Shown here: in pieces, positions 178 through 64,000 of the stretch
Layout of the letters: the number at the start of each line of letters is the position of its first letter
Position numbering within the stretch: position 1 is the stretch's first letter
Source: Girardia tigrina
Taxonomy: Eukaryota
Reading direction: 5' to 3'
NCBI GenBank assembly: GCA_001938485.1
Contig: MQRK01234723.1
Coordinates: 1-64,000 of the forward strand
Length of the DNA: 64,000 nt
Notes under the pieces: generated by a model
The model's input: only the letters and a program-made list of their open reading frames with translations
Databases searched by the model: none
Told to the model about the DNA's origin: nothing
Position numbers and translations under genes: made by a program

Positions 178-621
178 ATGAATATTTCAAAAAGAATCCA
201 AAAAGAAGTTCAATTTCTGAAAAACGAGACGCAGTTTAGCGCAGTTCCTGATGAAACGAATATGATGTTGTGGAGGGCGACCATTAAAGGACCTCCAGAT
301 TCTCCGTATGAGGGAGGAATATTCAATTTGGACATGACATTACCAGAAAATTATCCGTTTAGTCCTCCAAACGTACAAATGAAAACTCAAATATTTCATC
401 CAAATATAAATGAAAGTAGAATCTGTGTGGATATTCTAGGTGGAGGATGGTCAGCTATATTGAATATTCAAAAGGTTCTTCTTTCAATAGTGTCCCTCCT
501 CAACGATCCTAACCCTAGGAGTCCATTAAACAGTAAAGCTGCTGATTTATATGTGAAAGATAGGAATAAATATAACGAGACTGTGAAGGAATGGGTGGAA
601 AAATATGCTCGTGAAGAATAG
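178..621 (+). CDS. Ubiquitin-conjugating enzyme E2 (UBC4/UBE2D-like), intronless, 147 aa
   Basis: UBC fold motifs WRATIKGPPDSPYEGG, YPFSPP, FHPNI..RICVDIL (HPN triad plus catalytic Cys), SLLNDPNPRSPLN; length typical of a class I E2. Confidence 0.95.
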   Translation: MNISKRIQKEVQFLKNETQFSAVPDETNMMLWRATIKGPPDSPYEGGIFNLDMTLPENYPFSPPNVQMKTQIFHPNINESRICVDILGGGWSAILNIQKVLLSIVSLLNDPNPRSPLNSKAADLYVKDRNKYNETVKEWVEKYAREE

Positions 622-8438: not shown

Positions 8439-9956
8439 ATGCAAATTATTTTAATGGAAGAAATTTCCCATCAAACAATGAATGATAAATATGAATGTCA
8501 AATTTGTCTTTCGCGTGTTTCCGACAAAGTGATGTTTGATACTTGTAACCATTCATTCTGTACGTACTGTGCCGGGTCTTGCATCCTCCATGATGATAGG
8601 TGTCCTTTCGACAGATTGAAAATTGCATCAATGACGTATTACAATAACTCGAATGGGGAAACAATTACCAAAAGTATTATTGATTGTGCAACAGAAAAGT
8701 TTATAGAAACAATTAACTTCATTCTTGATAAAATTTGTTGGAAATTGAAAGAAAGTTGTTTGTTTATGGAATCACAATCGGAACAATATGGAGAACAAAT
8801 AATTGAAAATCTGAACGAATTAACCTCTGTTTCCGACGAGAATATCTTTGAACAATCTCAAAAATGTATTCGAATGTGCGACGTTTTAAATGAAATGAAA
8901 ATTGATATAAAAAACGAAAGAGGAGTATTTAATAGAGAATGGAGAGACATTAGTATTCTTCGTAGAAAAAGTGACAAAAATATGTTTCACAATTACTTTG
9001 CCTCTGATGATTGTAAATTTACTATATGGCGTTGTTTTGAAATCATATATCAAATCGATACATACAAGAAAGAATCCCTTCATTTCATAGGAAACTATTT
9101 AAAATGTACCGGCAACAATCTCCATCAAAGGAGTTTTAGAACATATTTTGAATACGTTTTAAATAATTATAGATTGATAGAGAAAATAGTTCGTTCGAAT
9201 AGACCACTTATTAACGTATGCCTTCTGTGGATCCTTAAAAATCCGTGGTGCGATGTTCGGGAATACGTCAGATGTCCTGAGAACAGTTGCGTGATCTGTT
9301 GGGAATCTTCAGAGACATCGAAACTAGCTACATGTGAAGTTTGTGGTACCGGACTTTGTTGTAATTGCACGAAGAATTTCCTTATAATTGACGACAAATG
9401 TTTGCTAAAATGTGATGGTAGATTAATAAGGAAAGACGGAGGTCATCGTGATCCTAATGTAAAAGATATTGAAGAAATGATCAATTCATACAAGGATGAA
9501 TATTTGCAATTAATATTGGACATTTTAGGTCATGTTTATGAAATAATGAAGGGGTTATCGAAAGATGAACGTTCAACTGAGAACTTCTTTACTCAAGTGA
9601 GGGACATTGATGACGTATACAAGTCTCTGTCGTTCAGTGATCATCAAGATTGTCTGTCAATTAATATGATTTTGACGAATACGTTAATGACATCAAAACT
9701 TTTATTAGATTTGATCAGTTTGAAAATGCTCATCTCATTATCTTTTCAGCCATTATCTACGTCTGATCATATCCAGACAGTTAGGCAGCATATGGCACCA
9801 TTAACATTTAAAACGGAGATATTGATAAAAAAGACAAAGAATTTGAATTTCGAAGAATCTCTGAAAACGGAGTACTCGACTGTTATCGAAGAATTGCGAG
9901 ATATTTTAGAAAAGGTATTTCAATTGCTTAATATAAAAGGACATAATTTTCAATAA
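8439..9956 (+). CDS. Intronless protein with two RING-type zinc fingers, probable E3 ligase, 505 aa
   Basis: N-terminal CQIC-x12-CNH-x2-CTYC-x10-CPFD RING; second RING-like cluster CVIC..CEVC..CCNC..CLLKC mid-protein; long open frame in very AT-rich DNA. Confidence 0.85.
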   Translation: MQIILMEEISHQTMNDKYECQICLSRVSDKVMFDTCNHSFCTYCAGSCILHDDRCPFDRLKIASMTYYNNSNGETITKSIIDCATEKFIETINFILDKICWKLKESCLFMESQSEQYGEQIIENLNELTSVSDENIFEQSQKCIRMCDVLNEMKIDIKNERGVFNREWRDISILRRKSDKNMFHNYFASDDCKFTIWRCFEIIYQIDTYKKESLHFIGNYLKCTGNNLHQRSFRTYFEYVLNNYRLIEKIVRSNRPLINVCLLWILKNPWCDVREYVRCPENSCVICWESSETSKLATCEVCGTGLCCNCTKNFLIIDDKCLLKCDGRLIRKDGGHRDPNVKDIEEMINSYKDEYLQLILDILGHVYEIMKGLSKDERSTENFFTQVRDIDDVYKSLSFSDHQDCLSINMILTNTLMTSKLLLDLISLKMLISLSFQPLSTSDHIQTVRQHMAPLTFKTEILIKKTKNLNFEESLKTEYSTVIEELRDILEKVFQLLNIKGHNFQ

Positions 9957-11949: not shown

Positions 11950-14858
11950 TTATAAAAAAAACTTTTTAAAAACCACGTTTTTCTTGCGGACTAAAAAGAA
12001 GAAAATAATTTTTGGGTAGAGATATGTTGATTATGATATAGGGTATAGAGAATCCGGGAAGAAAAAACTTTGAATTAGATATAATACTCTATCACGAATA
12101 ATAATTCAGAAAAATTAAAATAAAATCAAACATAAAGTAAATAAAGAACAAAAACTTTCTAAGTTAGTTTCATTACTTATGATCTAGTTTTCAGAATTTT
12201 ACTTAACAAAACTGAAGTTACAAACTTATTTGAAGACTAAAAAGTAGAAAATAATACTTTTATAAAAAAACGTGATTATGATTTTATTTTAATTTTTCTG
12301 AATTTATTTTAATTATTTTAGAATTTATGTAACATATTTTTCTATTTATTTTTATTTATTTATTATTTTATTTTAATTATTATTTATTTAAACGTGGGGC
12401 GCATTTTGTATATATTATTTATTTTATTAATTCTTACATTTGTCTTGTAGTATTTGCATGCTTGTTTATAAAGAATTATGGAAGATTTCTCGAGAAATAC
12501 CAAGACTCTAAGAATTCTTAGACACAACTATAAAAAAAATCAATCAATTTAATAACAGAACTTTTCGTAGTAATATCAATCGAAAATTTTTAAGTAGATG
12601 AATAGAAGGGATTCGCTGTTATGTAACTCGCTGTTTTGTAATTCGCTGTTATGAGGATACGCCGAATAGAATTCTATAAAATTTCACTAGTGTCAAGATA
12701 ATAATTATAAGAGATAATTTTTGGAATTCATTAATGAAGTTTCATATATTTTTTGGGTTTTTTGTAAAAGGAAAAATATTTGGGGAACTAATACAGGATT
12801 TCATATCGAAAGTTCTGATTTACCAAAGATTTTATATCGCAAGCTTCTTACACACTCCTTTGAATATCGCTTGAAAGATACTCATTGCTACTACTAATGA
12901 AGTTTTTAAATTCATTTGACCATTTCTTTAAATTTTTTATTCCGTATTTAATTTGTTACTAATTGAGAGGTTAAATAGTTTTCAATGCTTATGCTTATTA
13001 AAATTATTAAGTATAATATATAAATATGGTGCCATTAAGAATGTANNNNNNNNNNNNNNNNNNNNNNNNNNNNNNNNNNNNNNNNNNNNNNNNNNNNNNN
13101 NNNNNNNNNNNNNNNNNNNNNNNNNNNNNNNNNNNNNNNNNNNNCCCACGTTTTTCGTGATAGAGTATTATATCTAATTCAAAGTTTTTTCTTCCCGGAT
13201 TCTCTATACCCTATATCATAATCAACATATCTCTACCCAAAAATTATTTTCTTCTTTTTAGTCCGCAAGAAAAATGTAGCTTTTAAAACGTTTTTTATAA
13301 AAGTATTATTTTCTACTTTTTAGTCTTCAAATAAGTTTGTAACTTCAGTTTTGTTAAGTAAAATTCTGAAAACTAGATCAAAAGTAATGAAACTAACTTA
13401 GAAAGTTTTTGTTCTTTATTTACTTTATGTTTGATTTTATTTTAATTTTTTTGAATTTATTTTAATTATTTTAGAATTTATTTAACATATTTTTCTATTT
13501 ATTTTTATTTATTTATTATTTTATTTTAATTATTATTTAATTTATTTTTTTAATTTTTATTTTTTTGAGATCTCTCCGGTAATGTCGCGATTTTTTACAT
13601 GTTTTTGTATACTTTTTCTATTTTTTCGAATTTATTTTAATTATTTTTGAATTTATTTTACATACTTTTCTATTTATTTTTTATTTTATCAATCATTATT
13701 TAATTAATTTTTCTAATTTATTATTTTTTGAGCTCATTCTCCATTGTCGTGATTTTGTTTTGATATTTTTGTATACTTTTTCGATTTTATTGGGATTTTT
13801 TGAATTTATTTAAATTATTTTTCTATTTATTTTTTATTTTATTTATATTATTATTTCATTTAATTGTTTTTAATTTATTATGTTTTGAGCTCTTTCCGGC
13901 ATTGTCGCCTTTTTTCAATATTTTTGGAATTCTTAAACATTTTTTTAGTTTTTTTAAAAAATTCTATTTTATTATTTATTATTTTATTTATTTATTTAAT
14001 TTATTGTTTTAGACTTCATCTGGTTCAGCCATGATTTTTTTTAATATTTTTTGAGTTTATTTTAATTTTTCTGAATTTATTGTAATTATTTTAGAATTTA
14101 TTTAATATATTTTTCTATTTATTTATTTATTATTTTATTTTAATTATTATTTAATTTATTTTTTTTAATTTTTTGAGATTTTTTTTACATGTTTTTGTAT
14201 ACTTTTTCTATTTTTTCGAATTTATTTTAATTATTTTTGAATTTATTTTACATACTTTTCTATTTATTTTTTATTTTATCAATCATTATTTAATTAATTN
14301 NNNNNNNNNNNNNNNNNNNNNNNNNNNNNNNNNNNNNNNNNNNNNNNNNACTTTTTCTATTTTTTCGAATTTATTTTAATTATTTTTGAATTTATTTTAC
14401 ATACTTTTCTATTTATTTTTTATTTTATCAATCATTATTTAATTAATTTTTCTAATTTATTATTTTTTTGGACAATTTAAAATATTTTTTCTGATTTATT
14501 TTAATTTAATTTTTCTATTCATTCATTCATTAATTTTCTGGACAACCTGCTTATCGTCGCAATTTTTCGATTATTTTTATTAAAAAAATAATTTTAACAC
14601 ATCATTGATGTTGGTTAGTGTTCACTTTCATAAACATCCGCCATCTTGTTTTTTCCATACAAAATTTATTAATCAAATTGTGCGCAAACTAAGTACTTAA
14701 GAAGCATAGAAGTGCTACAATATTGAATTGTTAGGTGGAATATGGTTTCATACAAAGTTTCAGAAAGATAGGATTTTAAAAAATGGTCGAAAAATCGATC
14801 TCAAATTTTGTCCCGGACACACAAACAAGAAAGCAAGTTAAGAAAAACGTTTTAAAAA
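11950..14858 (-). mobile_element. Helentron-associated (HINE/DINE-1-like) non-autonomous element with central tandem repeats, inserted in the Tc1
   Basis: Minus-strand 5' end TTTT..ACGTTTTTCTTAACTTGCTTTCTTGTTTGTG homologous to 32606-32650; ACCACGTTTTT sub-TIR at 11972-11982; internal inverted duplications 11945-12270 vs 13150-13460; subtracting it leaves a ~1.35-kb Tc1. Confidence 0.6.
13430..14520. repeat. T-rich degenerate tandem repeat array
   Basis: Repeated GAATTTATTTTAATTATTTT(A/T)GAATTTATTT..TTTTCTATTTATTTTT units. Confidence 0.85.
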
Positions 14859-14938: not shown

Positions 14939-15989
14939 TTAATATTTTGTGTGGTATCCTTTCATCTTGATGATTGAAGACACCCTTCGCGGCATCGAAT
15001 CGACAAGTCGACGACATAAAGAACTTGATATGTTGTACCATAACTTTTCTATTTCTATCCACATTTTCTCTGAATTCAAAGTATCCATATTTTTTATTTT
15101 TCTCTTTATAATACCCCACAAATTCTCAATTGGGTTTACATCTGGTGAGTTGTCAGACCAATCAAGAATATTTATCTTCTTTGTTTTCAAAAAAAGACAC
15201 TGTTGATGCTGATCGATGGCAAGGTGCTTTGTCTTGCTGAAATATAAAATTTGGAAGAGGGAATACCAAGCATTGCCCTGTAATTTCTATGCTCTTGACA
15301 CTTAGGTCTTGATAGTTCTTCGAATTTAAATTTCCGTTTATCCGTTTTAAGATACCAACACCAAATCTGGAGAAAGATCCCCATACATGAACTTTGGCAC
15401 CGTGCTGGAGGACCTTCTTAGTACAAATGTGACTAAGCCTTTCATTGTCAAACCTTCTAACGATTTCGCTACGAGTGTGACTATATGTGCAGAACATAGA
15501 TTGATCGCTAAAAACTACATTCGACCACTTATCGATGTCCCAATTTTGTTTATCCCGAGCCCATTCAACTCTTCTTTTTCATTGCTTTCCATTCAATAAA
15601 GGCTTGCAAACAGCATAATGACTTTTTAAGCCGTACTTTATCAAAATTCTATTCACTGTACTTCGTGATACATGTATTATTCTAGCTGCATTGAAATCTC
15701 CTGTTATTTTACTTATCGACAAGCGCCTATTTTTCAAGCATATACGGCGAATAATTCTTTCAGAACGTTTTGGTAATTTTGAAGGTCGTCCACTACGTTT
15801 TTTATCTTCATATGTACTTTTTATCTCCATTGTCTTGAACTTATGTACAATTTTTTGAATGCCCCGCTTTGAAACAATAATACCATGTGTAACCTTCATA
15901 ATTTCTTGTATCCGACCCGTTGAATGACCCTCGTTCATTAATTCTACAATAATAATCCTAAACCTTATATCTATATTTCGAGTTGTCAT
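14939..15989 (-). pseudogene. Tc1 transposase, frameshifted
   Basis: Paired-like HTH with RSGRP, KVHVWGSF, FQQDKAPCH, SPDVNPIENLW spread over three ORF pieces (15579-15989, 15162-15497, 14939-15190). Confidence 0.92.
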
Positions 15990-24121: not shown

Positions 24122-27100
24122 TTAATCCGTGACCTTCCGGTGGCGGACCCCTTCGTTACTTTCAGTGTTTCTGGTATCAGCAAGTAAAGATTGGCGCATG
24201 GGATTTGCCTCCACTTCATGGGTCGTCTTCTGTCGTTCGTAAAAGATGATGATAGCGAGCAGAATAATGACCTCGATCACTATTCCAATGAAAGGCCACA
24301 AAGGAGCTAGTCTGTCTGAAGAAGGCCGCCGTCAATATATATCTCGGTCACTATGGAAGCTAGATCAAAATATACCTTTGACTCGCAGTTGCATAATGAC
24401 GGAATCATTGCCGTATTTATTTTTGGCTACACATTTATAGTAACCGGCGTCTCGCTTCACTAATACATCCCACACAATTACGTCCCTGAATTTGGAAGCG
24501 TTGTGAGAAGTTGACAACCGGTAATTGAATGACGTTCGTTTAGGAACTTCCATCCATTCGAGATCGTCAGGAACTAAAGGATAACCCGTGTATTTACACG
24601 ACACTTCCATCTTACCACCCTCAGTAGAGCGTTTGGATTCAATGAATTCCTGAAGAAATGGTGGAGCTGCCAGCAGAAACATTAAGCTTAATTTTAGAAT
24701 CAATCTTCAGTCTTACAAAAAATATGAGCTGTCGCGTTAGTACTCATCCCATTATCTGCAGTGATCTTCATAGTGTATTGGCCGGTAACTTTCTCAGCTG
24801 AAAATAAGCAAATTTTAGCGGAATGATAAAAAAGTAATAATAAATATTTCAGATAACAGCTCCGATAGTAACATGACACTAATCGAAGACTATAGAATTT
24901 TAAGGAAGACAAATCTATTTATCAGTCTCCCATTGAATAAAGAAATGTATTGCACACAATAGATTGAAACTAAAACCATTATATCATCAGCAATTATAAT
25001 TTCTAACGAAAAATGTTTTGAATTTTAATTTAATTGATTTATAATTTCTGATGATTATGCATGAAACATCGAAACATGTTCAATAATAATTTTCTTAAAC
25101 AAGCTTTAACTAAATTATTTTTTCAAAAATATCAACTTTGCGTTTAGAAGACTCAATAATAAATTTATGGATTTGAATTTTTAAGACAATGCGTTTCTAG
25201 ACATTCCAATCTCATTCCCTAATCAATTGCCATTTGATTATGTGTACATAAGAAAAATTAAATTTTAAATAATTTAGTTAAAATTATTTAAGAAATTAAT
25301 TACTATTAATTTAATTTTAAAAATTAAGTAAAAAGCATTAATTGTGACCATTGTCCCACCAGAGCTTTTCCTTTGGGGGGGGGGGGAACAGCGATATGCA
25401 TGCAATTTCTTCCACTCTAAATCAGAGCGGAAACTGATGATAAAGCAATATGGTATTATAGTAATTTACCATTAAGAAAAAAAGAAAGATTTTAAATTGA
25501 TTGAGAATGAAATTATTTTCCCAGTTAAAAAAAATTGTCCATATCATCACATGAGAGTTATTGGCCAAAAAGTGAATAACCATCAGAAAAAAACAAAAAG
25601 AAATGGAAACACCCCTAATTTTACTATAATTCAACAAGGAGACACACTAATAAACATTAGAATAGAGTAAAACTACAAGTGTGTCACTGATTCACAATAT
25701 CCCGAGTACCATAATAAGGTAATATTGAAAAGCGAATTCTTCTTTCCTTTTTTTACCATTTTCGGACAACTTCCCGCGCTTTCTCATCTGTCATTTTTTC
25801 TTGACCATCCTTCTTGACAAGCATACATATTTCCAAGTTATCAACGGACATACGTTGCCTTAAACGCGTGAGGATCCTATTCATGCCACTGAACGACCTC
25901 TCGACACTTGGTGTTCCCAAAGGATACAGAAGAATAACTGACGCAATCTTTTAGAGGTTAAGAAAAGTTTCAACGAAAACTTCTGTTGAATCCACCAAAG
26001 ATCGAAGCACATTCGAAGAAAAATGAATGACTACCTTTTGTCGAAGAAATGCCAGATGGTTACGAAACACATTGAACTCATCCAAAGCTTTGTCTGTTAT
26101 GCTGTTGAGAACTTTATGAGTTGCAAAAATCTTTCGCAACGGTGGGGTTTCGATCTGAACGACAATGAAAGAATTAATATAAAACCAAAATTCTTTCTTG
26201 AACATTTCATAAACACAGTTAAGAAAACAGCAAAACAAAGTTTGTGATGATATTAGTAATGTTACATATTTTTCGGCGAGTCAACTACAACGCAATATTT
26301 ACCTAAGCTTATTGTTGCGTTAACTGTTTATGAAATGTAGGCTCCGCACCCGTGCAACTCAAGAAAATTGAGGTACTCTTCTTGACAATCTAATGAAGGA
26401 TCAAATAATGAAGTCGCGGAGTACATCGCCATAAATTGATCAGAAAATCGATCTGCAAAGCTTTTTCAACAGACACATGATAAATGGTTTCACAATTTTC
26501 GAATGCATAGAAACAGGATCGATTTTAATTTCCTTAACAAGAGCTGTTGACGTTGATTGAATGAAGTGCTGTGCTTCATCTTGATAAAGAATAGGATTTT
26601 CTAATAATTCATTCAAATACCATTAATTTGGCAGTTGATTTGAACTCATCCAATCTCACAAGAGTAGAGTTTGGAGACTGTAGCTGATTTGATAAAACGA
26701 AGTGAGGTTGAAGAATAAGCTTCAATGCCAAGAGTAGAGCAATTCCCTTTGATGTCTGAAGTGTCAAAATCAGACCACCAGCTTCTGATGATAAGTCACC
26801 ATCATCTGTATAAATTTCTTGCAAAGTGACTAATATTGATTCCAAACATGTGATTGTTGATGCAATATCCATCTTGTGTTGTCAGACCGAACAAAGTTCG
26901 TATTAGGTCCATCAAGCAAGTCTTGAATTACTTTAAATTTTCTGAGGTTCCTCGGACTGTTATAGAAGAGCCGCCACAGGCCATTTAGAGTTGAGAAGAT
27001 TCTTTTAATTTCTGGATACTTTTGGGTGGCATTCACGCACACTAACTGTAAGACGTGGCTACGAAAATGAATATGTATCGCGTCTTTGGTACGATATTTA

Positions 27101-30100: not shown

Positions 30101-33100
30101 CTTTAGTCAAGTTCTGATTTAGTCAGCAATTGACCAGTATTAATAAGTGTGACTCTCGTCCCTAAAATATCACTCTTACTTACTTTGTTTCTTTGCGACT
30201 AGTAAAGTTATTATATAGATAAGATTGAATAATCTCTATTGACATAGAATAGCGATTTCCCCCTTGGGACAAAAGAAATAATTAGATAAAATACAATTCA
30301 TTGAAGTACCCTAACAGGAGATAGTGAGTCAAAATAAGATTTGAAACCACTAGCATTCTATCGCCATCTAATCCCATATGAATATTAATTTGAACAACGT
30401 TATAAACTTATCATGTAGTTATATATAATCAAGCTAGTTTAAAATAGATCATGAATGGACATCGACAGATTTAGCTTAAGTTATAATAAATTGCCCTGTT
30501 AACCGCTATTACTAAGAAGTGAGCTGTAACTATGAACTACTTATATTCTATTGATTCCCACTTTTGAAGTACTCAGTAGTGTATTTATTAAAGAATATTT
30601 ATTCAATAAAATTGTTGTAATATAAACTAATTAGATGTGTCATGGAATAACGAAATGATATTATTCTTCAATCCTTGCAACGTGCAACAGTCTCAGATGT
30701 TCAGAAACAGAATTATTTTCTATAGCACAATTTCACTCTTACACGACTGAAAATTTTACGAATCCCTCATTCAGCCCTGCAACACGGGTTCATTCAGATG
30801 AATATCCGACATCCCTAGGATCAGTAGCGTTGCTAGACGAGTGCGGGGCGTGCAGACCGCACCGGGTGACACAATCTTAGAGGGTGTCAACAAATGAAAA
30901 ATACATCGCGGAAATAACCCTGAATAAATAACCTGACGTTATGCTAAGGTTAACTAAAAAACACATGTTAATCGGAGTCCATGGCATCAATTTCCAGTTA
31001 AGAAATATTATTACGTCATTTCATGTTGATTTGACTTTACCAGTAATTGAATGCTATGATAAAGTAACACACACGTTCGTTGACTTGTGAAATCATTCAA
31101 TCGGTGCGGTACATAGCAGCTGTAGATACCCTACAAAATTCATTTACAATACATGATGGACGGATTGTGCTCCACTGCCTCCACACTCAGAATAAATCTG
31201 GAGGGGTGACACCGTGACTTTACAGCACTGGGTGAGACCAACCATAGCGACGCCACCGCCTTACACAACACGGTTTCATTCAGATGAATATCCGACAACC
31301 CTTACATAACACGGTTTCACCCATACGGCATATATAATTATCTATTATCTATATACCACGTTGTAAGATTTATAGATATGCTAAACCATTCTGACAATCT
31401 TGTGAGATCTTGAATGACATTTACAACGCCTCATCTCTTTATGTGAGACCAACTATATCATCTCTTATCCTTCATATTTAACAGAGATACGAAGCGAATG
31501 GAAATAAAATATCATTAGGTGGTTATAAATTATAACCACAAAATGATACTTTATTATATGTTATCCCGGGATCCCGTGATTGAAACCCATAGTTATAATG
31601 CAGACTATAAACTCATGATCGTACAAAATATTTTGCAGGATAAATAAACGACAAGGATTTTAGTAACGAAATTTAATAATACAATAGATAAAAAAGTGAC
31701 CGATTTGCAGTTCTGAATGGTAAAGTAAACATTAACAATAACGAAACAACAAGCTTAACTGAAACAAGTTTTAAAAAATTATGTAAACACGCGAACTAAA
31801 AGGACTGGAGTTAAGGAATGTTACTTGTACAATCCAAAGATGGGATACTTGCTCAATCCCGAAGGAGGGTCTCCAGAATGATGCAAACTGCCATCTAACT
31901 ATAAAACCTTCAGAATACGTTCGTGACGGATCGAACAACATATAATGTCAATTAGATAAATTTAATCACTCAATAAAACAATTTATCCCTACTTTATGTT
32001 TCAATGTGACATTTATGGACCAATATTAAATAAGTACGGAGTACCAAATGTACCTCTTAACCATTTTCATTAAACCTTTTCTTTACCTTTATCTTTGAAA
32101 TATATATTGTCGTTTTCGATAGAAATGTAAATTATTCCTAAATAGCACAAATCATGGGAATATATAAGTAAAGGAAATTGAAATGAATATAAATCTCGAT
32201 CGAATATGCACGCCAATATCAAGAGGCCGTGTTCGAGAATAGCGCATCCCCGTAGGTGCATGTATCAAATGAGTAACCCGGTATACGAAGACGACTTTTG
32301 CAAATCCTTTCATAACACTAGATAAGATTATCAGATATGAAAGATTACTTCAATAGATATCCCCGCGTGTCTCTTGCAATTATTGAAACATGACCTATTT
32401 ACAAAGGAATGAAATATCTGCGTTGGTACTCATGTTTTGACGGATAGGACGCATTTGACAGAAGAGATTATGCATTGATGACTTATTATTCATGTAAATA
32501 TTAAAGAGCAATATCTGAAAATTTGTTTCCTAAAGAATGCCTCAGTCGCTAAAACATTAGAATCATTTTTTATTGAATAATGATTATGCATACAATGTTA
32601 AATAATTTTACCACGTTTTTATTAGCTTGCTTTCTTGTCTGTTTGTCTGTCTAGAACAAATCTTGCGATTGATTTTTCGACCACTTTCAGTCATCCAATT
32701 CAGCTGAATTTTTTTATAAAGGTTTGCTTCCGATGACAATACAATTTGATAAAAAAAATAATTTTCTCTAATTTTTGTTGCAAAAAACCACTTACGATTA
32801 TCTACAAATTTATACACTGTATTAAATAGCAATCTTTTCGTTTATTTTCATGAATGAAGTTTTATACAGGCTTGCTTCCGATGACNNNNNNNNNNNNNNN
32901 NNNNNNNNNNNNNNNNNNNNNNNNNNNNNNNNNNNAAGCATTACCAATGCACTAAAAAGAGGAAAATAATTTTTTTCTAGACATGTGAGAAATTTTATAC
33001 CTAACCAAAAACGTGGGGCATAGAAATGATAGATTGTTACTAAAAAGCAGTAAAAACGAAATAGCAGTTACTAATAGCAGTAATTCAGAAATCCGCCCCA

Positions 33101-36100
33101 CGTTTTTGGTCAGGTATAAAATTTCGCACATGTCTAGAAAAAAATTATTTTCCTCTTTTTAGTGCATTGGTAATGCTTGAAAAACGTGGTTGTTTTTATA
33201 AAATTTTTTTATTAATAATATTATTATCATATATAAATACCCTTTATATAGACGTAATAATGTATCTTTTACATATAACAATTCTTTATGATCCTTTAAA
33301 TATGATCCTTAGCAATAAATTATCTGATTCCTCTTAAACTGCGTACGATCCTTTTTGGAGAATAATTATTTGTTGAAAAAATAAAAATTAATCTTACGTC
33401 CCTGACTCTGAACAATGAGATCAGTTATATTTGGCTATTTAATGCCGTTTAGATTTCAAAAAAGGAACAAAAGGCAATTTACATTTCTTAAAAACCATTT
33501 TCCCATCATATGATCTAAATAATAAAACCTCTCAATAATTTCTAAACCGATTACAGAGAATTCGAAAATCTCATTATTCTACTTTCATTTTTCCAATTTA
33601 AATAAACGTTCATTAATATTGGGCCACAAATTGATATAAAGATTTTAAATGTGATTTTTTTAAATATTAATAAAATAAAATTTACAATATTTGTTCCATT
33701 TAAACAAATAAAATACCAAATATTTAATTACACTATCTAGTCATGAGCGTTTGAAATGAAGTGCTGCAGAAGGATGCTGAAGATTACGGGGAAAAAAGAA
33801 GACCAGCGACTTTGTCTGGAGAGAGTGACAGAAATAATAGGTAAAAGATCGGAATCAATAGACGAGTTCATCAAGAAAAGGAGACTGAAATTCTACGAAC
33901 ATCAGATAAGAAAACAAACACTAGCAAAGGTTATGATTGAAGGAAGATTTGAAGGAGAAAGATTTAGAGTAAGACCAAAAGTCAATGGACAATAACTTAA
34001 AAGAATTGAGTGAATTCAACATGGAAGATCTGAGAAGAGAGACTACAAAAAGAGAGATGTATCAAAGACTTGTACATAATTTGGTGCAGCCACGGCCGAA
34101 TGGCAAAGGTCCAGAAGAAGAAGATCTAATCATTAGGTTATGTAGTATACCTCGGGAAAGATGATGTATGTACTTATGGTGTCCGTATTTTTAATCACTG
34201 GACGATTTATCACATTTTTGGTTTTATCGTGGATTCATCACACTTTAATTTTCTCGTGGATTGATGAAGTCCTAGAATTGTATTTATCAATGGGATCGGA
34301 GTACGAACGGTGTGACGTTGTATTCCTCCAACTAAGGAACTGATAGAATTTTCTTCAATTTAGACAAACGATTAAGGTAAATAGTAAATTTACTTCGATG
34401 ACAGATGTTGATACCTTGATATTATTATTAGTATCTTTATTAACACATTTAGAATTTTTTAAGTTTGATCGGTAAATTTTTCAATACATGGCTTTGAATA
34501 GCGATTTGTATTTAGTAAACTGATCACAGTTTAGATTATAAAAAGAAAATAATGTTTCAATTCTGTCTAATCGCTTATCAATTTTTTGGAAGCCTTATCT
34601 TCAAACAGGACTTGGTAACATGACTGAAGATATTACTACTTTAATCAATAATAATTAACGACTAATGTAAATTTAGGCTGAATATAGCGATAGATAATTC
34701 AATAAAATTAATAACAATAATTTAAAAAAAATTCTGTGAAATATGTAGCATGTTCAATAAATACGCGAACTTAGTAAACGGGGAAACTTTGAGATGAAGT
34801 TTGCCACGTACAATGGATGTGCTGTTCGCGACGGATCTACTGAAGTATTAGTAACTGTTAGGTCATCTGAGTAATGGAATAGTTAACGTTGCGATTATTT
34901 TTTCTAACTTTGTTTTTTCTATTATGGATGATCGAAATTGATTAGCTGATAGAACAACTCCACATCAAATTCTTTATGAAACCTGTGAAAACTTACAGAA
35001 AATTTATGTTATTTCGATGGATGTTTATGAAGACTAAGTATTTAAGAGGATCAAGCGTTTCTGTGAAGATTGTGAAAACTGCAAGGATGATTATAGGTCA
35101 GAATGACCATTTACTTAACTTTTTCAATGAAAAAAACAAACTTATACAATAGCTTATGCTTTACAATGACCGATTCACTGTGTGAGGAATATTTGGTGTG
35201 TGGATGTTTTTGTGTAGTGTTTGCATGTTTAAATGTTGTGTGTTGATTTGGGATTGTGCCTCTCCTAATTAGATGGATGATTAATATTTAATTTCTTATA
35301 ATCTGAAACTAATTTATTTAAATTTAGATTTAATATTCAAATTTTTAATTTTTATTATTGCAACTTTTAAAAAAGTTTATTGATTTTATTTTTGTAAATT
35401 TTTAAATAATTAAAATGAAATTAATGTTTAAAAATGACTATAAAAATATTTTATTTCAGCCAATAAAATTTAAATTAAATATTTTTAAATAAAATAATCT
35501 TCTCAAGTATAGTTCATATTATAATGGGAGATATTGAAAATTGATTGATGGATCTTAGTGAAAGCAATACTGTTGATCATCATAGAGATGATAAGAAATG
35601 TGAATGTAATAAATGTTCTGTAAAATGTGTGAGTTCTCTTAACACACTGTACAGATGATTACTGATGAACTAAATTTGAGAAAATTGTCCCTGCACATTA
35701 TTCTTTGAAAAATATTTGGGATTGAGAAAATTGTGTTCAAAATTTATCCCAAAGTTACTAACATCTAACTAAAAGGAAAAAAAGTACAAATGCTACAACG
35801 ATTGAAAAAATGCATCTCAAACTCGCAGTTTTTAAAAAGGTTATTACGAATAATATTTCATATTTCTAAGAGTACAAACATTGAGCTGAAATCAGAGCAG
35901 AAAATGGAAAGCAAAATATAAACCACGGTTCAAAAATGTCAAAAAGCCAATCAAAACTGCTAGTTGGTTTGGACATTCATGCTATTGTGCATCATGAATT
36001 TCTCCCTGAAGGACAAACAGTGAAAGCTGAAGTCTACCTGAAGTCTATCAAGCGTATGAGGGATCATGTGTGTCGTCTGTGACGACATCTGTGTGATGGT

Positions 36101-55826: not shown

Positions 55827-56490
55827 TATTAGGGTGAACCAAAAGTTTTTTCGTATTTTTATTAAAAATTGAAACATAATTTTACAAGAAATAAAAAACA
55901 TTTAAATTTCAAAGTAAAGACCATTTGAATCTATAGCTTCAACCCATCCATGGGTAAGTTATGCGATCCCGCTGCGGTACCATTGTTTGTTCTTAGAACC
56001 GAAGAACTGGTGACACATGTTTTTGACTTCGGCCAGATTATTGAAGCTGCGACCACGAAGAAAGTGTGCCATTGAGCGGAAAAGGTGATAGTCGGATGGC
56101 GCAAGATAACGGACTATACGCTGGGTGTGGAAGAAGTTCAAAGGCGTCAAGATTTTTGATTTTTTCCTTTGTTTGTTTGGTGGTGTGCGGTTTTGCATTG
56201 TTCTGTTGTTGAAGAACTCGTTTTCGATTGATCAAAGTGGGGTATTTCTCGCCAAGTGCCGCATACATTCGATCAAGTTTGGCGTAGTAAATGTTAGCAT
56301 CAATAGTGTGACCATTTGGAACCACCTCGATGTGAATCACGCCTTCGAAATTCCACCTAATACACAAAAGTGCCTTCCTTGAGAAACGATCTAGTTTCAC
56401 TACCGGTTTAGCCATTTGTCCGAGGTCCAAGCATTGATTTTGTTGGTCTGGATTACTGAAGTAAACCCACTTTTCATCGCAAGTTATAAT
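55827..56490 (-). mobile_element. Mariner (DD34D-type) 3' half
   Basis: WNFEGVIH, QQNNAKPH, HPAYSP/LAPSDYHLFRSM split by a frameshift; TIR-like TATTAGGGTGAACCAAAAGT. Confidence 0.88.
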
Positions 56491-58460: not shown

Positions 58461-60213
58461 ATAACTTAGTATCTGAACTTTATCAAAATTGAATGAATAT
58501 TATTGACAATATTTTAATATACACAATCTTACCCAAGTTTGGACTGACTAGAAAAAGTCGTTTTTTTGTTTTAGTCGATTTTATTATAGTTCTCAAAAAA
58601 TTTTATGTAACGTAATTTTATAGAACTAAATTTCATTAATGACTTTAAAGCGTTGCATTTTATTTCTCTTCTATTTTTGTAGCAAAATGTGATGACTTTT
58701 AAAACATGAAAAAATTGATTATGTTAAAATTTATAACATTGAATGACTTCATGTATTTTTTTAGCTTTAATCGGTTTTTACTCGATGAATCTTTTCTTTG
58801 AAATGTGAACCAACGACCTCGATTGTATTTAGTCGTCGATTGTCTCTCAAGTAATAATAAATATTGATAGTTAAGAATATTTGATACTTGAAATACAATC
58901 GCACATTTCAAAAGATTTTAATCAATATTACTGCTTCAAAATAATGCTCAAAGTTTTGAAAATGACAAGAGAAAATCAAATATCGAAATAAAAACGTTCT
59001 CAGATAGTAATTTTGAATAAAATCGGTCATTCGTAGCCCAAAAATTGCACAAATACTGGGAGTTTCACAGAAAGGGGTGGTCGCGTTGCGATTCCGTTTT
59101 AATTCATTTGTTAAAAATAAAATCAATATTTAAATAATTTAATTAAAATAATTAATTAAAATTAANNNNNNNNNNNNNNNNNNNNNNNNNNNNNNNNNNN
59201 NNNNNNNNNNNNNNNATATATAAGTATATATGTATATGTGTATATATATATAAATAAATATACATATGATCATCGCGTTCATATGGTTTTGCGATGATTG
59301 CTGTAAAACCAGCGCAATGTCCAAGCATTATTTGAAGTCAAAAATATTCTAAATAAATTAAGAACTCAATACAAGCCGATCATTCAAGCGGGATTAAAGC
59401 CACTTCCNCCAGCTACAGTTAAAGCGTTTAATAATACACCGAATTCAGATAATAAATATCAAAGGATTAATTTTGGAGAAAACGGAATACCTTATTCTCC
59501 AGTAAAAATAGAAAAATCTATCGAAAATGAAAAACATAAACCAGTAAATACGTTTCTACACTCAAATGGAAATGAGTCTCCCACCAAAGATTCCAAATCT
59601 AATGGATCTCTTAATCAAATCAATTTAACTTTGCATCACGAAAATTCAGCTGTGGGGAAATCAGTTTTCGTTCCGAAACTAGCGTCATTTTTTACTGTTC
59701 ATCGCAACGTAAACCATTCTGATCATTTTATAATTGGTCGACATTGTGAGCCTCATTTTTGTTTTTGTGTGTGTAATGAATGTGTCATTGGATTGATTTT
59801 TGACAAATGAAATTGAGGAATTTGCTTGTGTGTGTTTGATTTGGTGTTAATGTGAATACATTTCACAGTTTTTAAAAAACAAAAAAAAATTTGCAGTTCA
59901 ATTCTTTCAATTTTTGTAGTTTTTCAATCATGCAAAATAAATAAATCAATTCTGTTTTGTCAAATAAAAATTTTGAAAGTTTCGCTTGAAAAACAATCGT
60001 TGTACAATTTCTTCTTGAAAATGCTTCAAGATAATATTAAATGGNNNNNNNNNNNNNNNNNNNNNNNNNNNNNNNNNNNNNNNNNNNNNNNNNNCGAAAA
60101 TTCAGCTGTGGGGAAATCAGTTTTCGTTCCGAAACTAGCGTCATTTTTTACTGTTCATCGCAACGTAAACCATTCTGATCATTTCATAATTAATCAACAT
60201 TGTGAGCCTCATT

Positions 60214-60404
60214 AGTAGTGAAAAAATACAGAGGGACAGGACACGTACCCAAAAAACTTTTTTAATTCACCTACCAGATTCATCAAAAATGAAGGCTTTG
60301 AACCTGTTTCACAGCTCCAAACCCTTCATTTTGTGATGTAGCTGGAGAGTAAATTAAACAGTTTTTTTGGGTATTTCTCATATCCCCTGTATTTTTTCAC
60401 TACT
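60214..60404. repeat. Imperfect 191-bp terminal palindrome
   Basis: AGTAGTGAAAAAATACAG / CTGTATTTTTTCACTACT, TACCCAAAAAA / TTTTTTGGGTA, AAAATGAAGG / CCTTCATTTT, centre CTGT-TTC-ACAG. Confidence 0.9.
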
Positions 60405-60641
60405 TACATTCAATATACATCTAAAATATACCCAAAACACAACTCAAAAACTAAAACTAAACTAGTCTAAAAAACAGACTAAGAGTATCACAAAGAGTTG
60501 ATATATTCAAAGGATAGTACTCTCGAAGAGTTGAAATCTAAGATGGGGTATCAATAAAAGCAGAGTCTACATTTTAACAAAGGATAGTCGTAGAGTTTTA
60601 AAAATGAAGTCTACATCTTAACAATTTTTATCTATAAAAAT

Positions 60642-61229
60642 ATGATCGATAAACATTTTTGTGTCACATGTTCTAAATTTATTTCAAAAACTAATAAAGC
60701 TAAACATGAAAAGACACAAATACATCATACAAATTTAATTTTAAAACAACAGATTGATAAAGATTTTCAAGAAAAGACTGGTGGAGATCTTCAAACTTTA
60801 TCAAAGAAGTTACCAGATTTTCCATGGTCTAAATATAAAGGAGAACATCATCTACCAAAATATTCATATGCAGGACCTGGAACACGTTTAGATATNNNNN
60901 NNNNNNNNNNNNNNNNNNNNNNNNNNNNNNNNNNNNNNNNNNNNNCCAAAATATTCATATGCAGGACCTGGAACACGTTTAGATATAAGGTTAAACGAAA
61001 ACGATCAACCAAATCCAGGTGAAGAACCTATCAATCGAGTTGATGAAGCAGCTCTAAAACATGATATAGCATATAGAAATAATGACATTCGTTCAAGACA
61101 AAAAGCAGATATTGATCTAATTCAAGATTTAAATGAGATCAAGAAACCAACACTTGGTGAGAGACTAGGAAGATTACTTGTTAAAAATGCAATGAAGTTA
61201 AAGATTATGTTTGGAGGTGAAATAGATGA
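60642..61229 (+). CDS. Partial second copy of the ZnF-PLA2(-integrase) gene, broken by assembly gaps
   Basis: Near-identical to 61515-62050 but 15 codons shorter in the linker; sequence duplicated across the N gap at 60896-60945. Confidence 0.7.
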
Positions 61230-61514
61230 NNNNNNNNNNNNNNNNNNNNNNNNNNNNNNNNNNNNNNNNNNNNNNNNNNATACTCGCTACCGGTTTGAAC
61301 CCGAAGGCGCTCCGATGCACACACAACTTGTTGATGTGCGCGGAGGAGACGCGTCTGTTCCCATAAGCAATAAGAAGACAGAGAGTAATCACCGAGGGAA
61401 GTATGAAGGGATACAAGATAAGTGTGAGTTGCCGTTTAACTCAGGAAAGCGGATGGGGGCTCAGGGCCAACGAAGGTGTCTTAAAACGGAGGGAACACGA
61501 CATATAAAAAAAAT

Positions 61515-62906
61515 ATGATTGATAAACATTTTTGTGTCACATGTTCTAAATTCATTTCAAAAACTAATAAAGCTAAACATGAAAAGACACAAATACATCA
61601 TACAAACCTAATTTTAAAACAACATATTGATAAAGATCTTCAAGATAATAGTGTTGGAGATCTTAAAAAACTAACTTTAGAACATAATACTGGTGGAGAT
61701 CTTCAAACTTTATCAAAGAAGTTACCAGATTTTCCATGGTCTAAATATAAAGGAGAACATCATCTACCAAAATATTCATATGCAGGACCTGGAACACGTT
61801 TAGATATAAGGTTAAACGAAAACGATCAACCAAATCCAGGTGAAGAACCTATCAATCGAGTTGATGAAGCAGCTCTAAAACATGACATAGCATATAGAAA
61901 TAATGACATTCGTTCAAGACAAAAAGCAGACATTGATCTAATTCAAGATTTAAATGAGATCAAGAAACCAACACTTGGTGAGAGACTAGGAAGATTACTT
62001 GTTAAAAATGCAATGAAGTTAAAGATTATGTTTGGAGGTGAAATAGATGAGAATATAGAAAATGATCTCGAAGAGAAGCAAAGTATGAAACTAGTTACTG
62101 AACTTCATAAAGAATATAGAAAACCCAAAATATTTCTAAAAGTTAAAGTGTTTAACAAAGATGATATTTGGGGAGCAGATTTAGTTGAAATGAAAAAAGA
62201 TGATGATTATAAATATATCTTAACTATTATAGATTTATACACAAAATATGCATGGGCTTTCCCATTAAAAAACAAAACAGGAAATACTATAAGAAATACA
62301 TTCGAAGAGTTATTCGAACAAGAACCAGATAGAATTCCTAAAAAACTATATGTTGATCATGGATCAGAATTCTATAATAAAACATTTTTAGATTTCTTAA
62401 AACTAAACAATATAGAAATATATTCAACATTCAATCAACCAGATGAAAGAAGTCAAGGACCATCACATAATCCAGTTATAGAAAGATTCAATAGAACATT
62501 AAAAAACTATATGTGGAAAGAGTTTACAATACAAGGAAATCAAAAATGGTTAAAGATATTACCAAAGTTATTAGATTATTACAATCATAAAGTTCATAGA
62601 ACAATCGGTGTTTCTCCTGAAGAAGCAAGTGATAATCCTGATTTAATAAAAGAAAGAGTAGAACAAAATAATAATACAAATGATGATATGATAGATATCC
62701 AAAAATTTAAAGTAGGTGATCATGTGAGAATCTTTAAATGGAAGAATAAGTTTGAAAAAGGTTTCACACATAAGTGGTCTAAAGAAGTCTTTGTTATAAG
62801 TGATGTTCATAAAACAAAACCTATAGTCTATTCAATTATTGATCTAAATGGAGAGAAGATATTAGGAAGGTTTTATAAAAATGAATTACAAAGATCATCT
62901 TTTTAA
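61515..62906 (+). CDS. Zinc finger - parvovirus-type phospholipase A2 - retroviral-type (rve) integrase fusion, 463 aa
   Basis: CVTC..HEKTQIH; LPKYSYAGPG, PINRVDEAALKHDIAY, RQKAD; WGADLVEM, IDLYTKYAW, YVDHGSEF, VIERFNRTLK, YNHKVHRTIG, FKVGDHVRI, GRFYKNELQ. Confidence 0.92.
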   Translation: MIDKHFCVTCSKFISKTNKAKHEKTQIHHTNLILKQHIDKDLQDNSVGDLKKLTLEHNTGGDLQTLSKKLPDFPWSKYKGEHHLPKYSYAGPGTRLDIRLNENDQPNPGEEPINRVDEAALKHDIAYRNNDIRSRQKADIDLIQDLNEIKKPTLGERLGRLLVKNAMKLKIMFGGEIDENIENDLEEKQSMKLVTELHKEYRKPKIFLKVKVFNKDDIWGADLVEMKKDDDYKYILTIIDLYTKYAWAFPLKNKTGNTIRNTFEELFEQEPDRIPKKLYVDHGSEFYNKTFLDFLKLNNIEIYSTFNQPDERSQGPSHNPVIERFNRTLKNYMWKEFTIQGNQKWLKILPKLLDYYNHKVHRTIGVSPEEASDNPDLIKERVEQNNNTNDDMIDIQKFKVGDHVRIFKWKNKFEKGFTHKWSKEVFVISDVHKTKPIVYSIIDLNGEKILGRFYKNELQRSSF

Positions 62907-64000
62907 ATCATCTCAACAGTAAACATCTTACCATTTTTTATCAGGATTTGACAATGCTTCTCTTCAAGAACTAAACAAAAAGCCTTTGCTTTAAATTCAC
63001 TTGTTTTTGAAATGTGAACTGAGATATCACATCCATTTACGGATAGTTTTTCATCTTGTGCAGATACATCAAAACAGAAGATGGAGTATAGATTCTTAAA
63101 ATCTCGAATGTTTAACTGAGCAGTTTCAATTTGAAATTCTTTACACATTTTAAGATAAGCGAGATAGGGTTCCATTTGATAATTCTTTGAGGAATCAAAT
63201 TCCATTTTATTGATAGGATAGTAAGAGTTATTAATCTGTACTCTTAAACTCGTGATTTGATTAGTACCATCTTTTTGTATAAATAAGGAGTTATTTTTCT
63301 CAATTGAAGTGGTTAAGTCTTTGAAAGCTAGTAAAACATATCTTGGTCTAGAACTGGTTAAACTTACTTTCCAACTTATGTTTGTACTTCCTGGTGTAAG
63401 ATCAATGGTTGTTCCATTTCTATTTAAGAAGTTGACTGATATAGGTTTATCTTTGTTCAATCTTTCTAACAAAGCAACTTCACTTCTGGGGTTAACTGTT
63501 AACTCTGGAACCCATAACTCTATTAAATCAAGTTCAACTTTACCTGTAGGTTTTACAGCAGTAGCACCCTCACCTGTACCTGTACCATATAAAATATCTG
63601 CGGGATTCAATTTTCTATTTATGATGATGTTGATAGGTAAGAGAAATAAAACTCTGTTATAATTTTCTAAGAATCCAAATAACTTATTCAATGGGAATCT
63701 TCCTTCTGATGTATATGATTTATCAGCTTTTAGTTTATCATCATTATTATATAAAGACTTTCTGATTTTAAAACCAGTATTATCTGTGGTTCCTTTTTCA
63801 ACATCTGGAACCCAACCTATAGATTCACCTTCTGGAGATGCTTTGTTTAACATGATAAAATTTAACATGCTTGAAAAGTCACCACAGTTATGAATATTTT
63901 CAATTTCTGATGAACCAAGTTGTAATCTCATATTTTCAAACATCCTTGGAAAGAAGTTGTTTTCAAGTGTAACATTTGAATCAGCAACAAAGCCAGATAG
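62903..64000 (-). CDS. Double jelly-roll major capsid protein of Polinton/adintovirus type (5' end beyond window)
   Basis: Frame open to the window edge (..TLENNFFPRMFEN..); PLNKLFGF, IELWVP, RPRYVLLAF, VQINNSYYP, IFCFDVS motifs; convergent with the integrase, stop codons overlap. Confidence 0.8.
   Translation of the reverse strand, partial: LSGFVADSNVTLENNFFPRMFENMRLQLGSSEIENIHNCGDFSSMLNFIMLNKASPEGESIGWVPDVEKGTTDNTGFKIRKSLYNNDDKLKADKSYTSEGRFPLNKLFGFLENYNRVLFLLPINIIINRKLNPADILYGTGTGEGATAVKPTGKVELDLIELWVPELTVNPRSEVALLERLNKDKPISVNFLNRNGTTIDLTPGSTNISWKVSLTSSRPRYVLLAFKDLTTSIEKNNSLFIQKDGTNQITSLRVQINNSYYPINKMEFDSSKNYQMEPYLAYLKMCKEFQIETAQLNIRDFKNLYSIFCFDVSAQDEKLSVNGCDISVHISKTSEFKAKAFCLVLEEKHCQILIKNGKMFTVEMI

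What the first reader, a model, noticed from the sequence alone, without database searches (positions are those of the whole stretch)
61515..62906. Single ORF fusing a parvovirus-like PLA2 entry domain to a Polinton integrase
Seen: one gap-free 463-codon frame ordered ZnF, PLA2 (intact YxGPG Ca-loop and HD dyad) and DDE integrase with SH3-like tail, with no chromodomain after FYKNELQ. Known: this PLA2 type is the endosomal-escape domain of parvoviral VP1u; to my knowledge Polintons/adintoviruses that carry it encode it separately from the integrase. Inference: the integrase may be virion-packaged with the membrane-penetration enzyme, coupling entry and integration, possibly as a protease-cleaved polyprotein; GG motifs border the PLA2 on both sides (TGG-DL, MFGG-EI), reminiscent of adenain sites. 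Best candidate for an undescribed system.
Basis: partly seen in the sequence, partly recalled or inferred. Interest (0 to 1): 0.9.

Follow-up and report, generated by a model that had tools for sequence, protein, structure and literature searches.

The report
Phospholipase–integrase fusion of a Polinton-like virus
An intact gene of a virus-like element in an animal genome joins a parvovirus-type membrane-breaching phospholipase to a retrovirus-type integrase; the fusion is real and shared by many relatives, but the papers I could search do not discuss it.

Summary
Window 61515-62906 (+) is one 463-codon open frame with no gap. It encodes a C2H2-like finger, a parvovirus-type PLA2 (Pfam PF08398, above cut-off), a retroviral-type DDE integrase core (PF00665) and an SH3-like tail with no chromodomain.

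It converges on, and overlaps by 4 nt, a double jelly-roll capsid gene that runs off the window end. The element is therefore a Polinton-like/MELD-type dsDNA virus element in an AT-rich metazoan genome.

The fusion is neither an artefact nor unique. 94 of the 120 best database relatives (38-78% identity) carry both domains. In 82 aligned fusions the PLA2 catalytic residues and the DDE triad are invariant or nearly so.

Diglycine-type motifs sit at both borders of the PLA2, in low-confidence hinges of the model, and are depleted in the integrase part. They fit the cleavage rule of the mavirus maturation protease but not the adenovirus P4 rule. Cleavage and virion packaging remain inferences, supported by analogy with mavirus, whose integrase is a virion protein.

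In nine literature searches the PLA2 appeared only as a separate gene (PLA2X, CAP). Verdict: a new variant of a known kind, of moderate interest.

The parts
61515..62906 (+). PLA2-integrase fusion gene, 463 codons plus stop, intact
61515..61643 (+). N-terminal C2H2-like finger module (aa 1-43), specific to the closest subfamily
   Evidence: Cys7, Cys10, His22 and His28 spacing; beta-beta-alpha in the model at pLDDT 77-90; present in about 16-24 of 82 relatives; not detected by Pfam
61644..61697 (+). Disordered linker (aa 44-61) ending in the N-side diglycine motif
   Evidence: pLDDT below 50 at aa 45-61; G60 in 73/82, G61 in 63/82, D62 in 79/82
61698..62042 (+). Parvovirus-type phospholipase A2 module (aa 62-176): calcium loop, His-Asp dyad, distal Asp
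   Evidence: PF08398 E 6.9e-10; H123, Y127 and D139 in 82/82, D124 in 81/82, G91 in 80/82
62022..62042 (+). Boundary motif (aa 170-176): invariant Lys and Gly plus a second Gly; candidate maturation cleavage site
   Evidence: K170 and G174 in 82/82; G174 plus G175 or G176 in 76/82; confidence dip at 171-180; followed by a gap-rich, variable-length linker
62043..62162 (+). Linker helix and conserved pre-core segment (aa 177-216); no HHCC zinc motif
62163..62684 (+). Retroviral-type integrase catalytic core (aa 217-390) with DDE triad D222, D281, E323
   Evidence: PF00665 E 1.2e-13; triad in 82/82; PFV integrase matches
62700..62903 (+). SH3-like C-terminal domain (aa 396-463); no chromodomain follows
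   Evidence: beta strands at 403-460; 77 of 82 relatives end at the same place, and 5 have a 38-46 aa extension
62903..64000 (-). Double jelly-roll major capsid protein gene, convergent with the fusion gene and overlapping it by 4 nt; open to the window edge, with about 78 N-terminal codons outside the window
   Evidence: PF21738 E 7.5e-24; 71% identical to residues 98-444 of P0269; frame open to 64000; structural matches to MELD-virus, virophage, adintovirus and mavirus capsids
60636..61229 (+). Fragmentary second copy of the 5' third of the fusion gene (finger, linker, PLA2). It is in two pieces, each ending at an assembly gap, and no integrase part is present
   Evidence: 93-99% nucleotide identity to the full copy; one in-frame length difference in the linker
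61280..61508 (.). GC-rich (about 52%) stretch directly upstream of the start codon, unlike the sequence upstream of the fragmentary copy; unexplained
   Evidence: no Rfam or tRNA match

Best explanation
The gene belongs to an endogenous Polinton-like (MELD-type) double-stranded DNA virus element in a metazoan genome. It encodes a member of a large conserved protein family in which a parvovirus-type phospholipase A2 is fused in front of a retroviral-type integrase. Shown: the architecture, the conservation of both active sites, the neighbouring capsid gene and the family. Inferred: the protein is built into the virus particle, as the integrase of the related virophage mavirus is. After uptake, the PLA2 breaches the endosomal membrane as the VP1 unique region of parvoviruses does, and the integrase then inserts the linear genome. 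Also inferred, with less confidence: the element's cysteine protease releases the PLA2 by cutting at the diglycine-type motifs on both sides of it.
For: The ORF is intact and both Pfam domains pass their cut-offs. 94 of the 120 best relatives have both domains. In 82 aligned fusions, H123, Y127, D139, D222, D281 and E323 are invariant and D124 is present in 81/82, so both enzymes appear to be under selection. The capsid gene is adjacent and convergent. Two relatives' capsid and fusion proteins share source and contig length (6660 and 16244 nt), which suggests conserved adjacency (inference only). Mavirus virions contain the rve integrase and the protease; that protease cuts at GG|X or GX|G, and a packaged lipase-like protein is also cleaved (PMC6048507). 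Virion-packed lipases were already proposed for Polintons and PLVs (PMC4642659). GG/GxG motifs occur at the N-side site in 67/82, at the boundary in 77/82 and at the calcium loop in 65/82, but in only 2/82 each in the integrase core and tail. In the integrase part, 13/82 have any such motif against 41.4 +/- 4.5 in shuffles. Both border sites fall in low-confidence hinges of the model.
Against: There is no direct evidence of particles, packaging, cleavage or enzyme activity. The window holds no protease, polymerase, ATPase or terminal repeat. The boundary motif is also kept in most PLA2 proteins with other tails, so it could be a structural cap of the PLA2 fold. The 82 sequences are related, so motif counts and the shuffle control overstate independence. 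The adenovirus-type hydrophobic residue four positions before the cut is present in only 8/82. Gene neighbourhoods of relatives were not examined.
Confidence: 0.55

Rival explanations
1. The fusion protein is packaged and works uncleaved. The PLA2 stays tethered to the integrase, and through it to the genome ends, so that membrane penetration and delivery of the integration complex are physically coupled. The diglycine motifs are flexible hinges or helix caps, not cleavage sites.
For: The PLA2 occupies the place where retroviral integrases carry their N-terminal HHCC domain, and no HHCC motif is present. The boundary motif is kept in PLA2 proteins with unrelated tails, as expected of a structural feature. 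The adenovirus-type P4 rule is not met. The parvoviral PLA2 itself works while tethered to a capsid protein (PMC4642659).
Against: GG/GxG motifs are depleted in the integrase part relative to shuffles, which suggests avoidance of a protease. Mavirus processes its packaged lipase-like protein at such a motif. A variable-length linker follows the motif.
Confidence: 0.2
2. The PLA2 acts inside the producing or target cell rather than from the particle, for example on nuclear or other internal membranes during genome delivery or exit. The fusion would then only secure co-expression with the integrase.
For: Nothing in the window shows packaging. The same PLA2 module is joined to several different tails, so it behaves as a portable enzyme module.
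Against: All characterised uses of this Pfam family are virion-borne entry functions (PMC8502044; PMC4642659). The integrase of the nearest studied relative is a virion protein.
Confidence: 0.12
3. This copy is an inactive genomic fossil or an exapted host gene. The open frame would then reflect recent insertion or host use, not a working virus gene.
For: It lies in a repeat-rich, poorly assembled region with transposon remnants and a fragmentary second copy. Only 2.5 kb of the element is visible.
Against: The 463-codon frame and every catalytic residue are intact. The neighbouring capsid frame is intact as far as it can be seen. The two differences in the PLA2 piece of the second copy are both synonymous. 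The 4-nt gene overlap is typical of compact viral genomes.
Confidence: 0.08
4. The single frame is an assembly or gene-model artefact that joins two genes.
For: There are assembly gaps and redundant pieces just upstream.
Against: There is no N inside the ORF. 94 independent database proteins from other samples show the same fusion.
Confidence: 0.01

Closest known systems
PLA2X of Alpha (Mayetiola-class) adintoviruses and the 'CAP' ORF of Spodoptera Mavericks (PMC8502044, PMC5803895)
   Same: The same Pfam family of parvovirus-type PLA2, placed at the N-terminus of a protein of a Polinton-type animal element, with a presumed role in entry.
   Different: Those are separate small genes whose tail is a pX-like peptide or has no recognised domain, and the integrase is encoded elsewhere and carries a chromodomain. 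Here the tail is the integrase itself and there is no chromodomain.
Integrase and capsid of 'MELD virus sp.' entries in BFVD (A0A8S5L5R7, A0A8S5L5M3)
   Same: They are the best structural matches of the integrase part (E 4e-18, 25% identity) and of the capsid (E 1.3e-15).
   Different: The deposited integrase is 327 aa, too short to hold the PLA2 module. No deposited viral protein matched over PLA2 plus integrase.
Mavirus virion proteins MV02 (rve integrase) and MV13 (lipase-like, cleaved) (PMC6048507)
   Same: A packaged rve integrase, a packaged lipolytic protein processed by a clan CE protease at GG|X / GX|G, and a double jelly-roll capsid.
   Different: The two functions lie on separate proteins, the lipase belongs to a different fold family, and the host is a protist with a giant-virus helper.
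Parvovirus VP1 unique region
   Same: The same PLA2 family, with a calcium loop, His-Asp dyad and distal Asp, tethered to a virion protein.
   Different: There it is fused to a single jelly-roll capsid protein of an ssDNA virus; here it is fused to an integrase of a dsDNA element. The direct sequence match to AAV capsids is weak (E about 1).
Retroviral / Ty3 integrases (PFV intasome)
   Same: A DDE catalytic core plus an SH3-like C-terminal domain.
   Different: There is no HHCC N-terminal domain; a PLA2 module and, in this subfamily, a C2H2-like finger stand in front of the core.

Membership tests
Parvovirus-type phospholipase A2 (Pfam PF08398) | Profile match above the curated cut-off | tested here: met
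   39.5 bits against a cut-off of 23.9, E 6.9e-10
Parvovirus-type phospholipase A2 (Pfam PF08398) | Calcium-binding glycine loop, His-Asp catalytic dyad with the following Tyr, and a distal Asp | tested here: met
   All are present in the window protein. In 82 relatives: G91 80, P92 74, G93 64, H123 82, D124 81, Y127 82, D139 82
Parvovirus-type phospholipase A2 (Pfam PF08398) | Phospholipase activity | not testable with these tools
Retroviral-type (rve) integrase | DDE catalytic triad in an RNase H-like core | tested here: met
   PF00665 at 51.6 bits against 32.6; D222, D281 and E323 in 82/82; PFV core match
Retroviral-type (rve) integrase | N-terminal HHCC zinc-binding domain | tested here: not met
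   There are no conserved Cys or His pairs between the PLA2 and the core. The only zinc-finger-like motif is C2H2-like, lies at the far N-terminus and is limited to a subfamily
Retroviral-type (rve) integrase | SH3-like C-terminal domain | tested here: met
   Beta strands at 403-460 with high confidence; two- and three-domain integrase structures match
Polinton / Maverick (Polintoviricetes) | rve integrase | tested here: met
Polinton / Maverick (Polintoviricetes) | Double jelly-roll major capsid protein | tested here: met
   PF21738 E 7.5e-24; Foldseek matches to MELD-virus, virophage, adintovirus and mavirus capsids
Polinton / Maverick (Polintoviricetes) | Protein-primed family B DNA polymerase | not testable with these tools
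   The element runs off the window at 64000. No polymerase is present in the window, and relatives' contigs were not fetched
Polinton / Maverick (Polintoviricetes) | Terminal inverted repeats and target-site duplication | tested here: inconclusive
   No inverted repeat involves 58500-64000. The far end is outside the window, and the near end lies among assembly gaps
Polinton / Maverick (Polintoviricetes) | Adenain-like cysteine protease, packaging ATPase and penton protein | not testable with these tools
   None lies inside the window
Adintoviridae as proposed (PMC8502044) | Integrase with a predicted chromodomain | tested here: not met
   No chromodomain. Only 5 of 82 relatives have a C-terminal extension
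Adintoviridae as proposed (PMC8502044) | PLA2X: PLA2 with a pX-like tail as a separate virion gene (Alpha class) | tested here: not met
   The PLA2 is fused to the integrase in one frame. Whether a separate PLA2X also exists in the element cannot be seen
Adintoviridae as proposed (PMC8502044) | Adenovirus-like hexon | tested here: inconclusive
   The capsid family is about 410-448 aa. An 'Adintovirus sp.' capsid is rank 5 and a MELD virus protein is rank 1
Substrate of a clan CE maturation protease | Adenovirus-type site: Met/Ile/Leu four residues before the cut plus the glycine pair (my own knowledge of the rule) | tested here: not met
   The window protein fits at the boundary site only. Across the family the P4 column is Met/Ile/Leu in 8/82
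Substrate of a clan CE maturation protease | Mavirus-type site GG|X or GX|G (PMC6048507) | tested here: met
   Boundary site in 76/82 and N-side site in 62/82. Both lie in low-confidence hinges
Substrate of a clan CE maturation protease | Actual cleavage | not testable with these tools
   No proteomic data are at hand

The most novel reading that the evidence does not exclude
In a whole lineage of animal Polinton-like viruses the PLA2 has taken the place of the integrase's HHCC N-terminal domain. The enzyme that opens the endosome is then part of the integration complex bound to the genome ends, so that penetration, genome escort and integration are carried out by one virion protein. This arrangement is not known from any studied virus.
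Probability: 0.2. Interest if true: 0.7.

Novelty: new variant of a known kind. Interest (0 to 1): 0.5.

Why it matters
Particles of Polintons and their animal relatives have never been seen, and how they enter cells and when the integrase acts are open questions. An entry enzyme can only work during entry if it is inside the particle. A conserved fusion of that enzyme to the integrase is therefore sequence-level evidence that these integrases travel in the virion, as in mavirus and retroviruses. It also defines a recognisable lineage marker (PLA2 plus rve in one protein, no chromodomain, small capsid protein of about 410-450 aa) for sorting the many unclassified elements in animal genomes and metagenomes. 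Finally, it shows that the same PLA2 module is joined to different virion partners.

Tried and rejected
**Assembly artefact.** Rejected: there is no N in the ORF and there are 94 independent fused relatives.

**Broken capsid gene.** The ORF list suggested a 346-aa capsid gene, but the frame is open to the window edge and simply runs off.

**Adenovirus-type cleavage rule.** It fails family-wide at P4.

**Zinc finger as a family feature.** It is limited to the nearest subfamily and is not seen by Pfam.

**GC-rich stretch upstream of the ORF.** There is no Rfam, tRNA or Pfam signal; it is left unexplained.

**Terminal inverted repeats.** None was found in the window.

**Organism names of relatives.** The cluster look-up gave no accessions or species.

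**PDB sequence search of the capsid.** No hit.

**Dupuy et al. 2011.** This is the source of the PLA2-bearing insect fragments drawn in Yutin 2013. It is not held in the library, so I could not check whether its figure already shows a fused gene.

**Unused resources.** The third large protein search was not spent, because an integrase-only query would return the same fused proteins.

Full report
**1. The observation**

Window 61515-62906 (+) is a single open frame of 463 codons plus stop. No N lies inside it. At the local base composition, 463 codons without a stop have a chance of about 7e-18.

Pfam places an integrase core (PF00665, aa 217-303, 51.6 bits against a cut-off of 32.6) and a parvovirus-type phospholipase A2 domain (PF08398, aa 82-151, 39.5 bits against 23.9) in the same protein. 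By sequence, the core matches foamy-virus integrase structures (E about 2e-6), and the PLA2 stretch weakly matches AAV capsid chains (E about 1).

An AlphaFold2 model built on 82 relatives is confident (mean pLDDT 87.7). It shows, in order:
- a small beta-beta-alpha finger (aa 4-43);
- a disordered linker (45-61);
- a helical PLA2 (to about 175);
- a dip in confidence at 171-180;
- a long helix;
- the integrase core (218-390);
- a beta-rich SH3-like tail (403-460).

Foldseek returns the PFV intasome integrase at E 7e-16. There is no chromodomain. The one soft point is the zinc finger, which rests only on Cys/Cys/His/His spacing and the predicted fold.

**2. Surroundings**

The gene converges on a minus-strand gene and overlaps it by 4 nt. 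That gene is a double jelly-roll capsid protein (PF21738, E 7.5e-24). Its frame stays open to the window edge, so it runs off at 64000 and is not broken. Against a 444-aa relative, about 78 N-terminal codons lie outside the window. A model of that relative best matches a 420-aa protein of a 'MELD virus sp.', followed by virophage, ascovirus, adintovirus and mavirus capsids.

Elsewhere the window carries an Ig I-set exon, Tc1/mariner remnants, a RING-finger ORF and a ubiquitin-conjugating enzyme gene, in DNA of about 29% GC. This is an invertebrate-like metazoan genome, not human.

Only about 2.5 kb of the element is visible. No polymerase, protease, ATPase or terminal repeat can be seen.

Just upstream lies a fragmentary second copy of the gene's first third (60636-61229). 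It is in two pieces, each ending at an assembly gap, and has no integrase part. It is 93-99% identical in DNA to the full copy and has one in-frame length difference in the disordered linker. In the PLA2 piece both differences are synonymous. It may be a real partial copy or assembly redundancy from a multi-copy family. I did not fill or infer any gap.

The 229 nt directly before the start codon are unusually GC-rich, differ from the sequence before the fragmentary copy and match nothing.

**3. The fusion is a family**

The full-length protein finds 1450 relatives. Of the best 120 (38-78% identity, 255-530 aa, from JGI, ENA, NCBI and Logan assemblies), 94 carry both PF00665 and PF08398. Of ten 'integrase-only' relatives of similar length, eight have a sub-threshold PLA2.

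In an alignment of 82 fusions conservation is as follows:

| Feature | Residues | Share of 82 |
|---|---|---|
| PLA2 catalytic His, the Tyr after it, distal Asp | H123, Y127, D139 | 82 each |
| PLA2 catalytic Asp | D124 | 81 |
| Calcium loop | G91 / P92 / G93 | 80 / 74 / 64 |
| Integrase DDE triad | D222, D281, E323 | 82 each |

Both enzymes therefore look selected. 77 of the 82 end where the window protein ends, and five have a 38-46 aa extension that in three is annotated as a chromodomain.

The finger occurs only in the nearest subfamily. Most relatives start 1-30 residues before the N-side glycine pair, and a few carry another small N-terminal domain, DUF5679.

Searching the N-terminal 200 residues alone against 1.84 billion representatives gives 945 hits. 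Many are short. Among the longer ones, some are fusions and some have the PLA2 in front of a tail that is not an integrase. So this PLA2 is a portable N-terminal module.

Two capsid relatives and two fusion relatives share source and contig length (6660 and 16244 nt). This suggests, but does not prove, that the gene pair is syntenic elsewhere.

**4. Mechanism**

Shown: the architecture, two conserved active sites and the capsid neighbour. The rest is inference from named precedents:
- Parvoviruses use this PLA2, tethered to a capsid protein, to escape the endosome. Yutin et al. 2015 proposed that lipases of Polintons, PLVs and virophages are packed into virions for the same purpose.
- In mavirus, the studied relative, the rve integrase and the protease are virion components. 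The protease cuts at GG|X or GX|G, and a packaged lipase-like protein is cleaved at such a site.

An entry enzyme fused to the integrase therefore implies that the integrase is in the particle.

On cleavage, GG or GxG motifs are found as follows:

| Region | Proteins with at least one motif (of 82) |
|---|---|
| N-side border of the PLA2 | 67 |
| Calcium loop | 65 |
| PLA2/integrase boundary | 77 |
| Integrase core | 2 |
| Integrase tail | 2 |

From the boundary onward, 13/82 have any such motif, against 41.4 +/- 4.5 in composition-preserving shuffles (minimum 29 in 500). Both border sites lie in low-confidence hinges, and a variable-length linker follows the boundary site.

Against cleavage:
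- The sequences are related, so the counts are not independent.
- The boundary Lys and Gly are also kept in PLA2 proteins with other tails, which fits a structural role equally well.
- The adenovirus-type hydrophobic residue four positions before the cut is present in only 8/82.

I put virion delivery at about 0.55, and cleavage at roughly 0.4 within that.

**5. Comparison with what is known**

Published accounts list the PLA2 of these elements as a separate gene. Examples are PLA2X with a pX-like tail in Alpha adintoviruses, 'CAP' in the Spodoptera Mavericks, where the integrase has a chromodomain, the leafhopper adintoviruses and the entomopoxvirus-associated PLVs.

The best deposited viral match of the fusion model is a 327-aa MELD-virus integrase with no room for a PLA2. 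No viral entry matched across both halves.

Nine full-text searches found no description of the fusion. A 2026 preprint on mosaicism in these viruses does not mention it. The library is open-access only, and the 2011 paper behind the insect fragments drawn in Yutin 2013 is not held, so prior depiction in a figure cannot be excluded.

Membership: the domains are true members of PF08398 and PF00665. 'Polinton' is plausible but untested for its polymerase and termini. The proposed Adintoviridae features of a chromodomain integrase and a separate PLA2X are not met.

**6. Verdict**

This is a real, intact and conserved gene. It is a new variant of a known kind rather than a new system. Interest is moderate (0.5).

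**7. Steps left out, and a slip**

Steps left out: I did not fetch the DNA of relatives' contigs by look-up, pattern or related-locus search.

Noticed in passing
window 61280-61508: A GC-rich island (about 52% against about 29% around it) lies directly upstream of the fusion gene's start codon. It is not shared with the fragmentary second copy and has no Rfam, tRNA or Pfam match. It could be the element's terminal or promoter region, or a misjoined contig.
   Followed up: partly
window 59639-59757 and 60095-60213: A 119-nt direct repeat at 97% identity, with an assembly gap between the two copies. Together with the duplicated gene fragment it suggests that redundant small contigs were scaffolded next to the element.
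   Followed up: no
window 178-621 (+): An intact single-exon ORF of 147 aa with a full ubiquitin-conjugating enzyme domain (UQ_con, E 3.5e-45). It is either an intronless host gene or a retrocopy.
   Followed up: no
window 8439-9956 (+): A 505-aa open frame with an N-terminal C3HC4 RING finger, unusually long for this AT-rich DNA.
   Followed up: no
window 15582-15989 (-) and 56038-56430 (-): Remnants of Tc1/mariner transposons: HTH domains of a Tc3-like transposase and a partial mariner DDE domain.
   Followed up: no
window 24368-24703 (-): An ORF fragment with an immunoglobulin I-set domain (E 6.9e-7), probably an exon of a host cell-adhesion gene. It marks the host as a metazoan.
   Followed up: no
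window 11950-13457 and 13395-14469: Two pairs of long inverted repeats (152 and 167 nt, 95-99% complementary, about 1 kb apart) lie next to a degenerate short-period tandem array. This may be a foldback-type or MITE-like element.
   Followed up: no
window 32936-33178: An 84-nt inverted repeat at 98% complementarity with a 75-nt spacer, starting right after an assembly gap.
   Followed up: no
relatives P0175 (416 aa) and P0201 (2741 aa): The same PLA2 module sits at the C-terminal end of an MBT-repeat protein and of a very long protein. These are probably gene models that run from a host gene into an inserted element, or captured fragments.
   Followed up: no
relatives P0100, P0102, P0162: In some family members a 40-aa DUF5679 domain stands in front of the PLA2, where the window protein has its C2H2-like finger. 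Small N-terminal modules seem interchangeable.
   Followed up: partly
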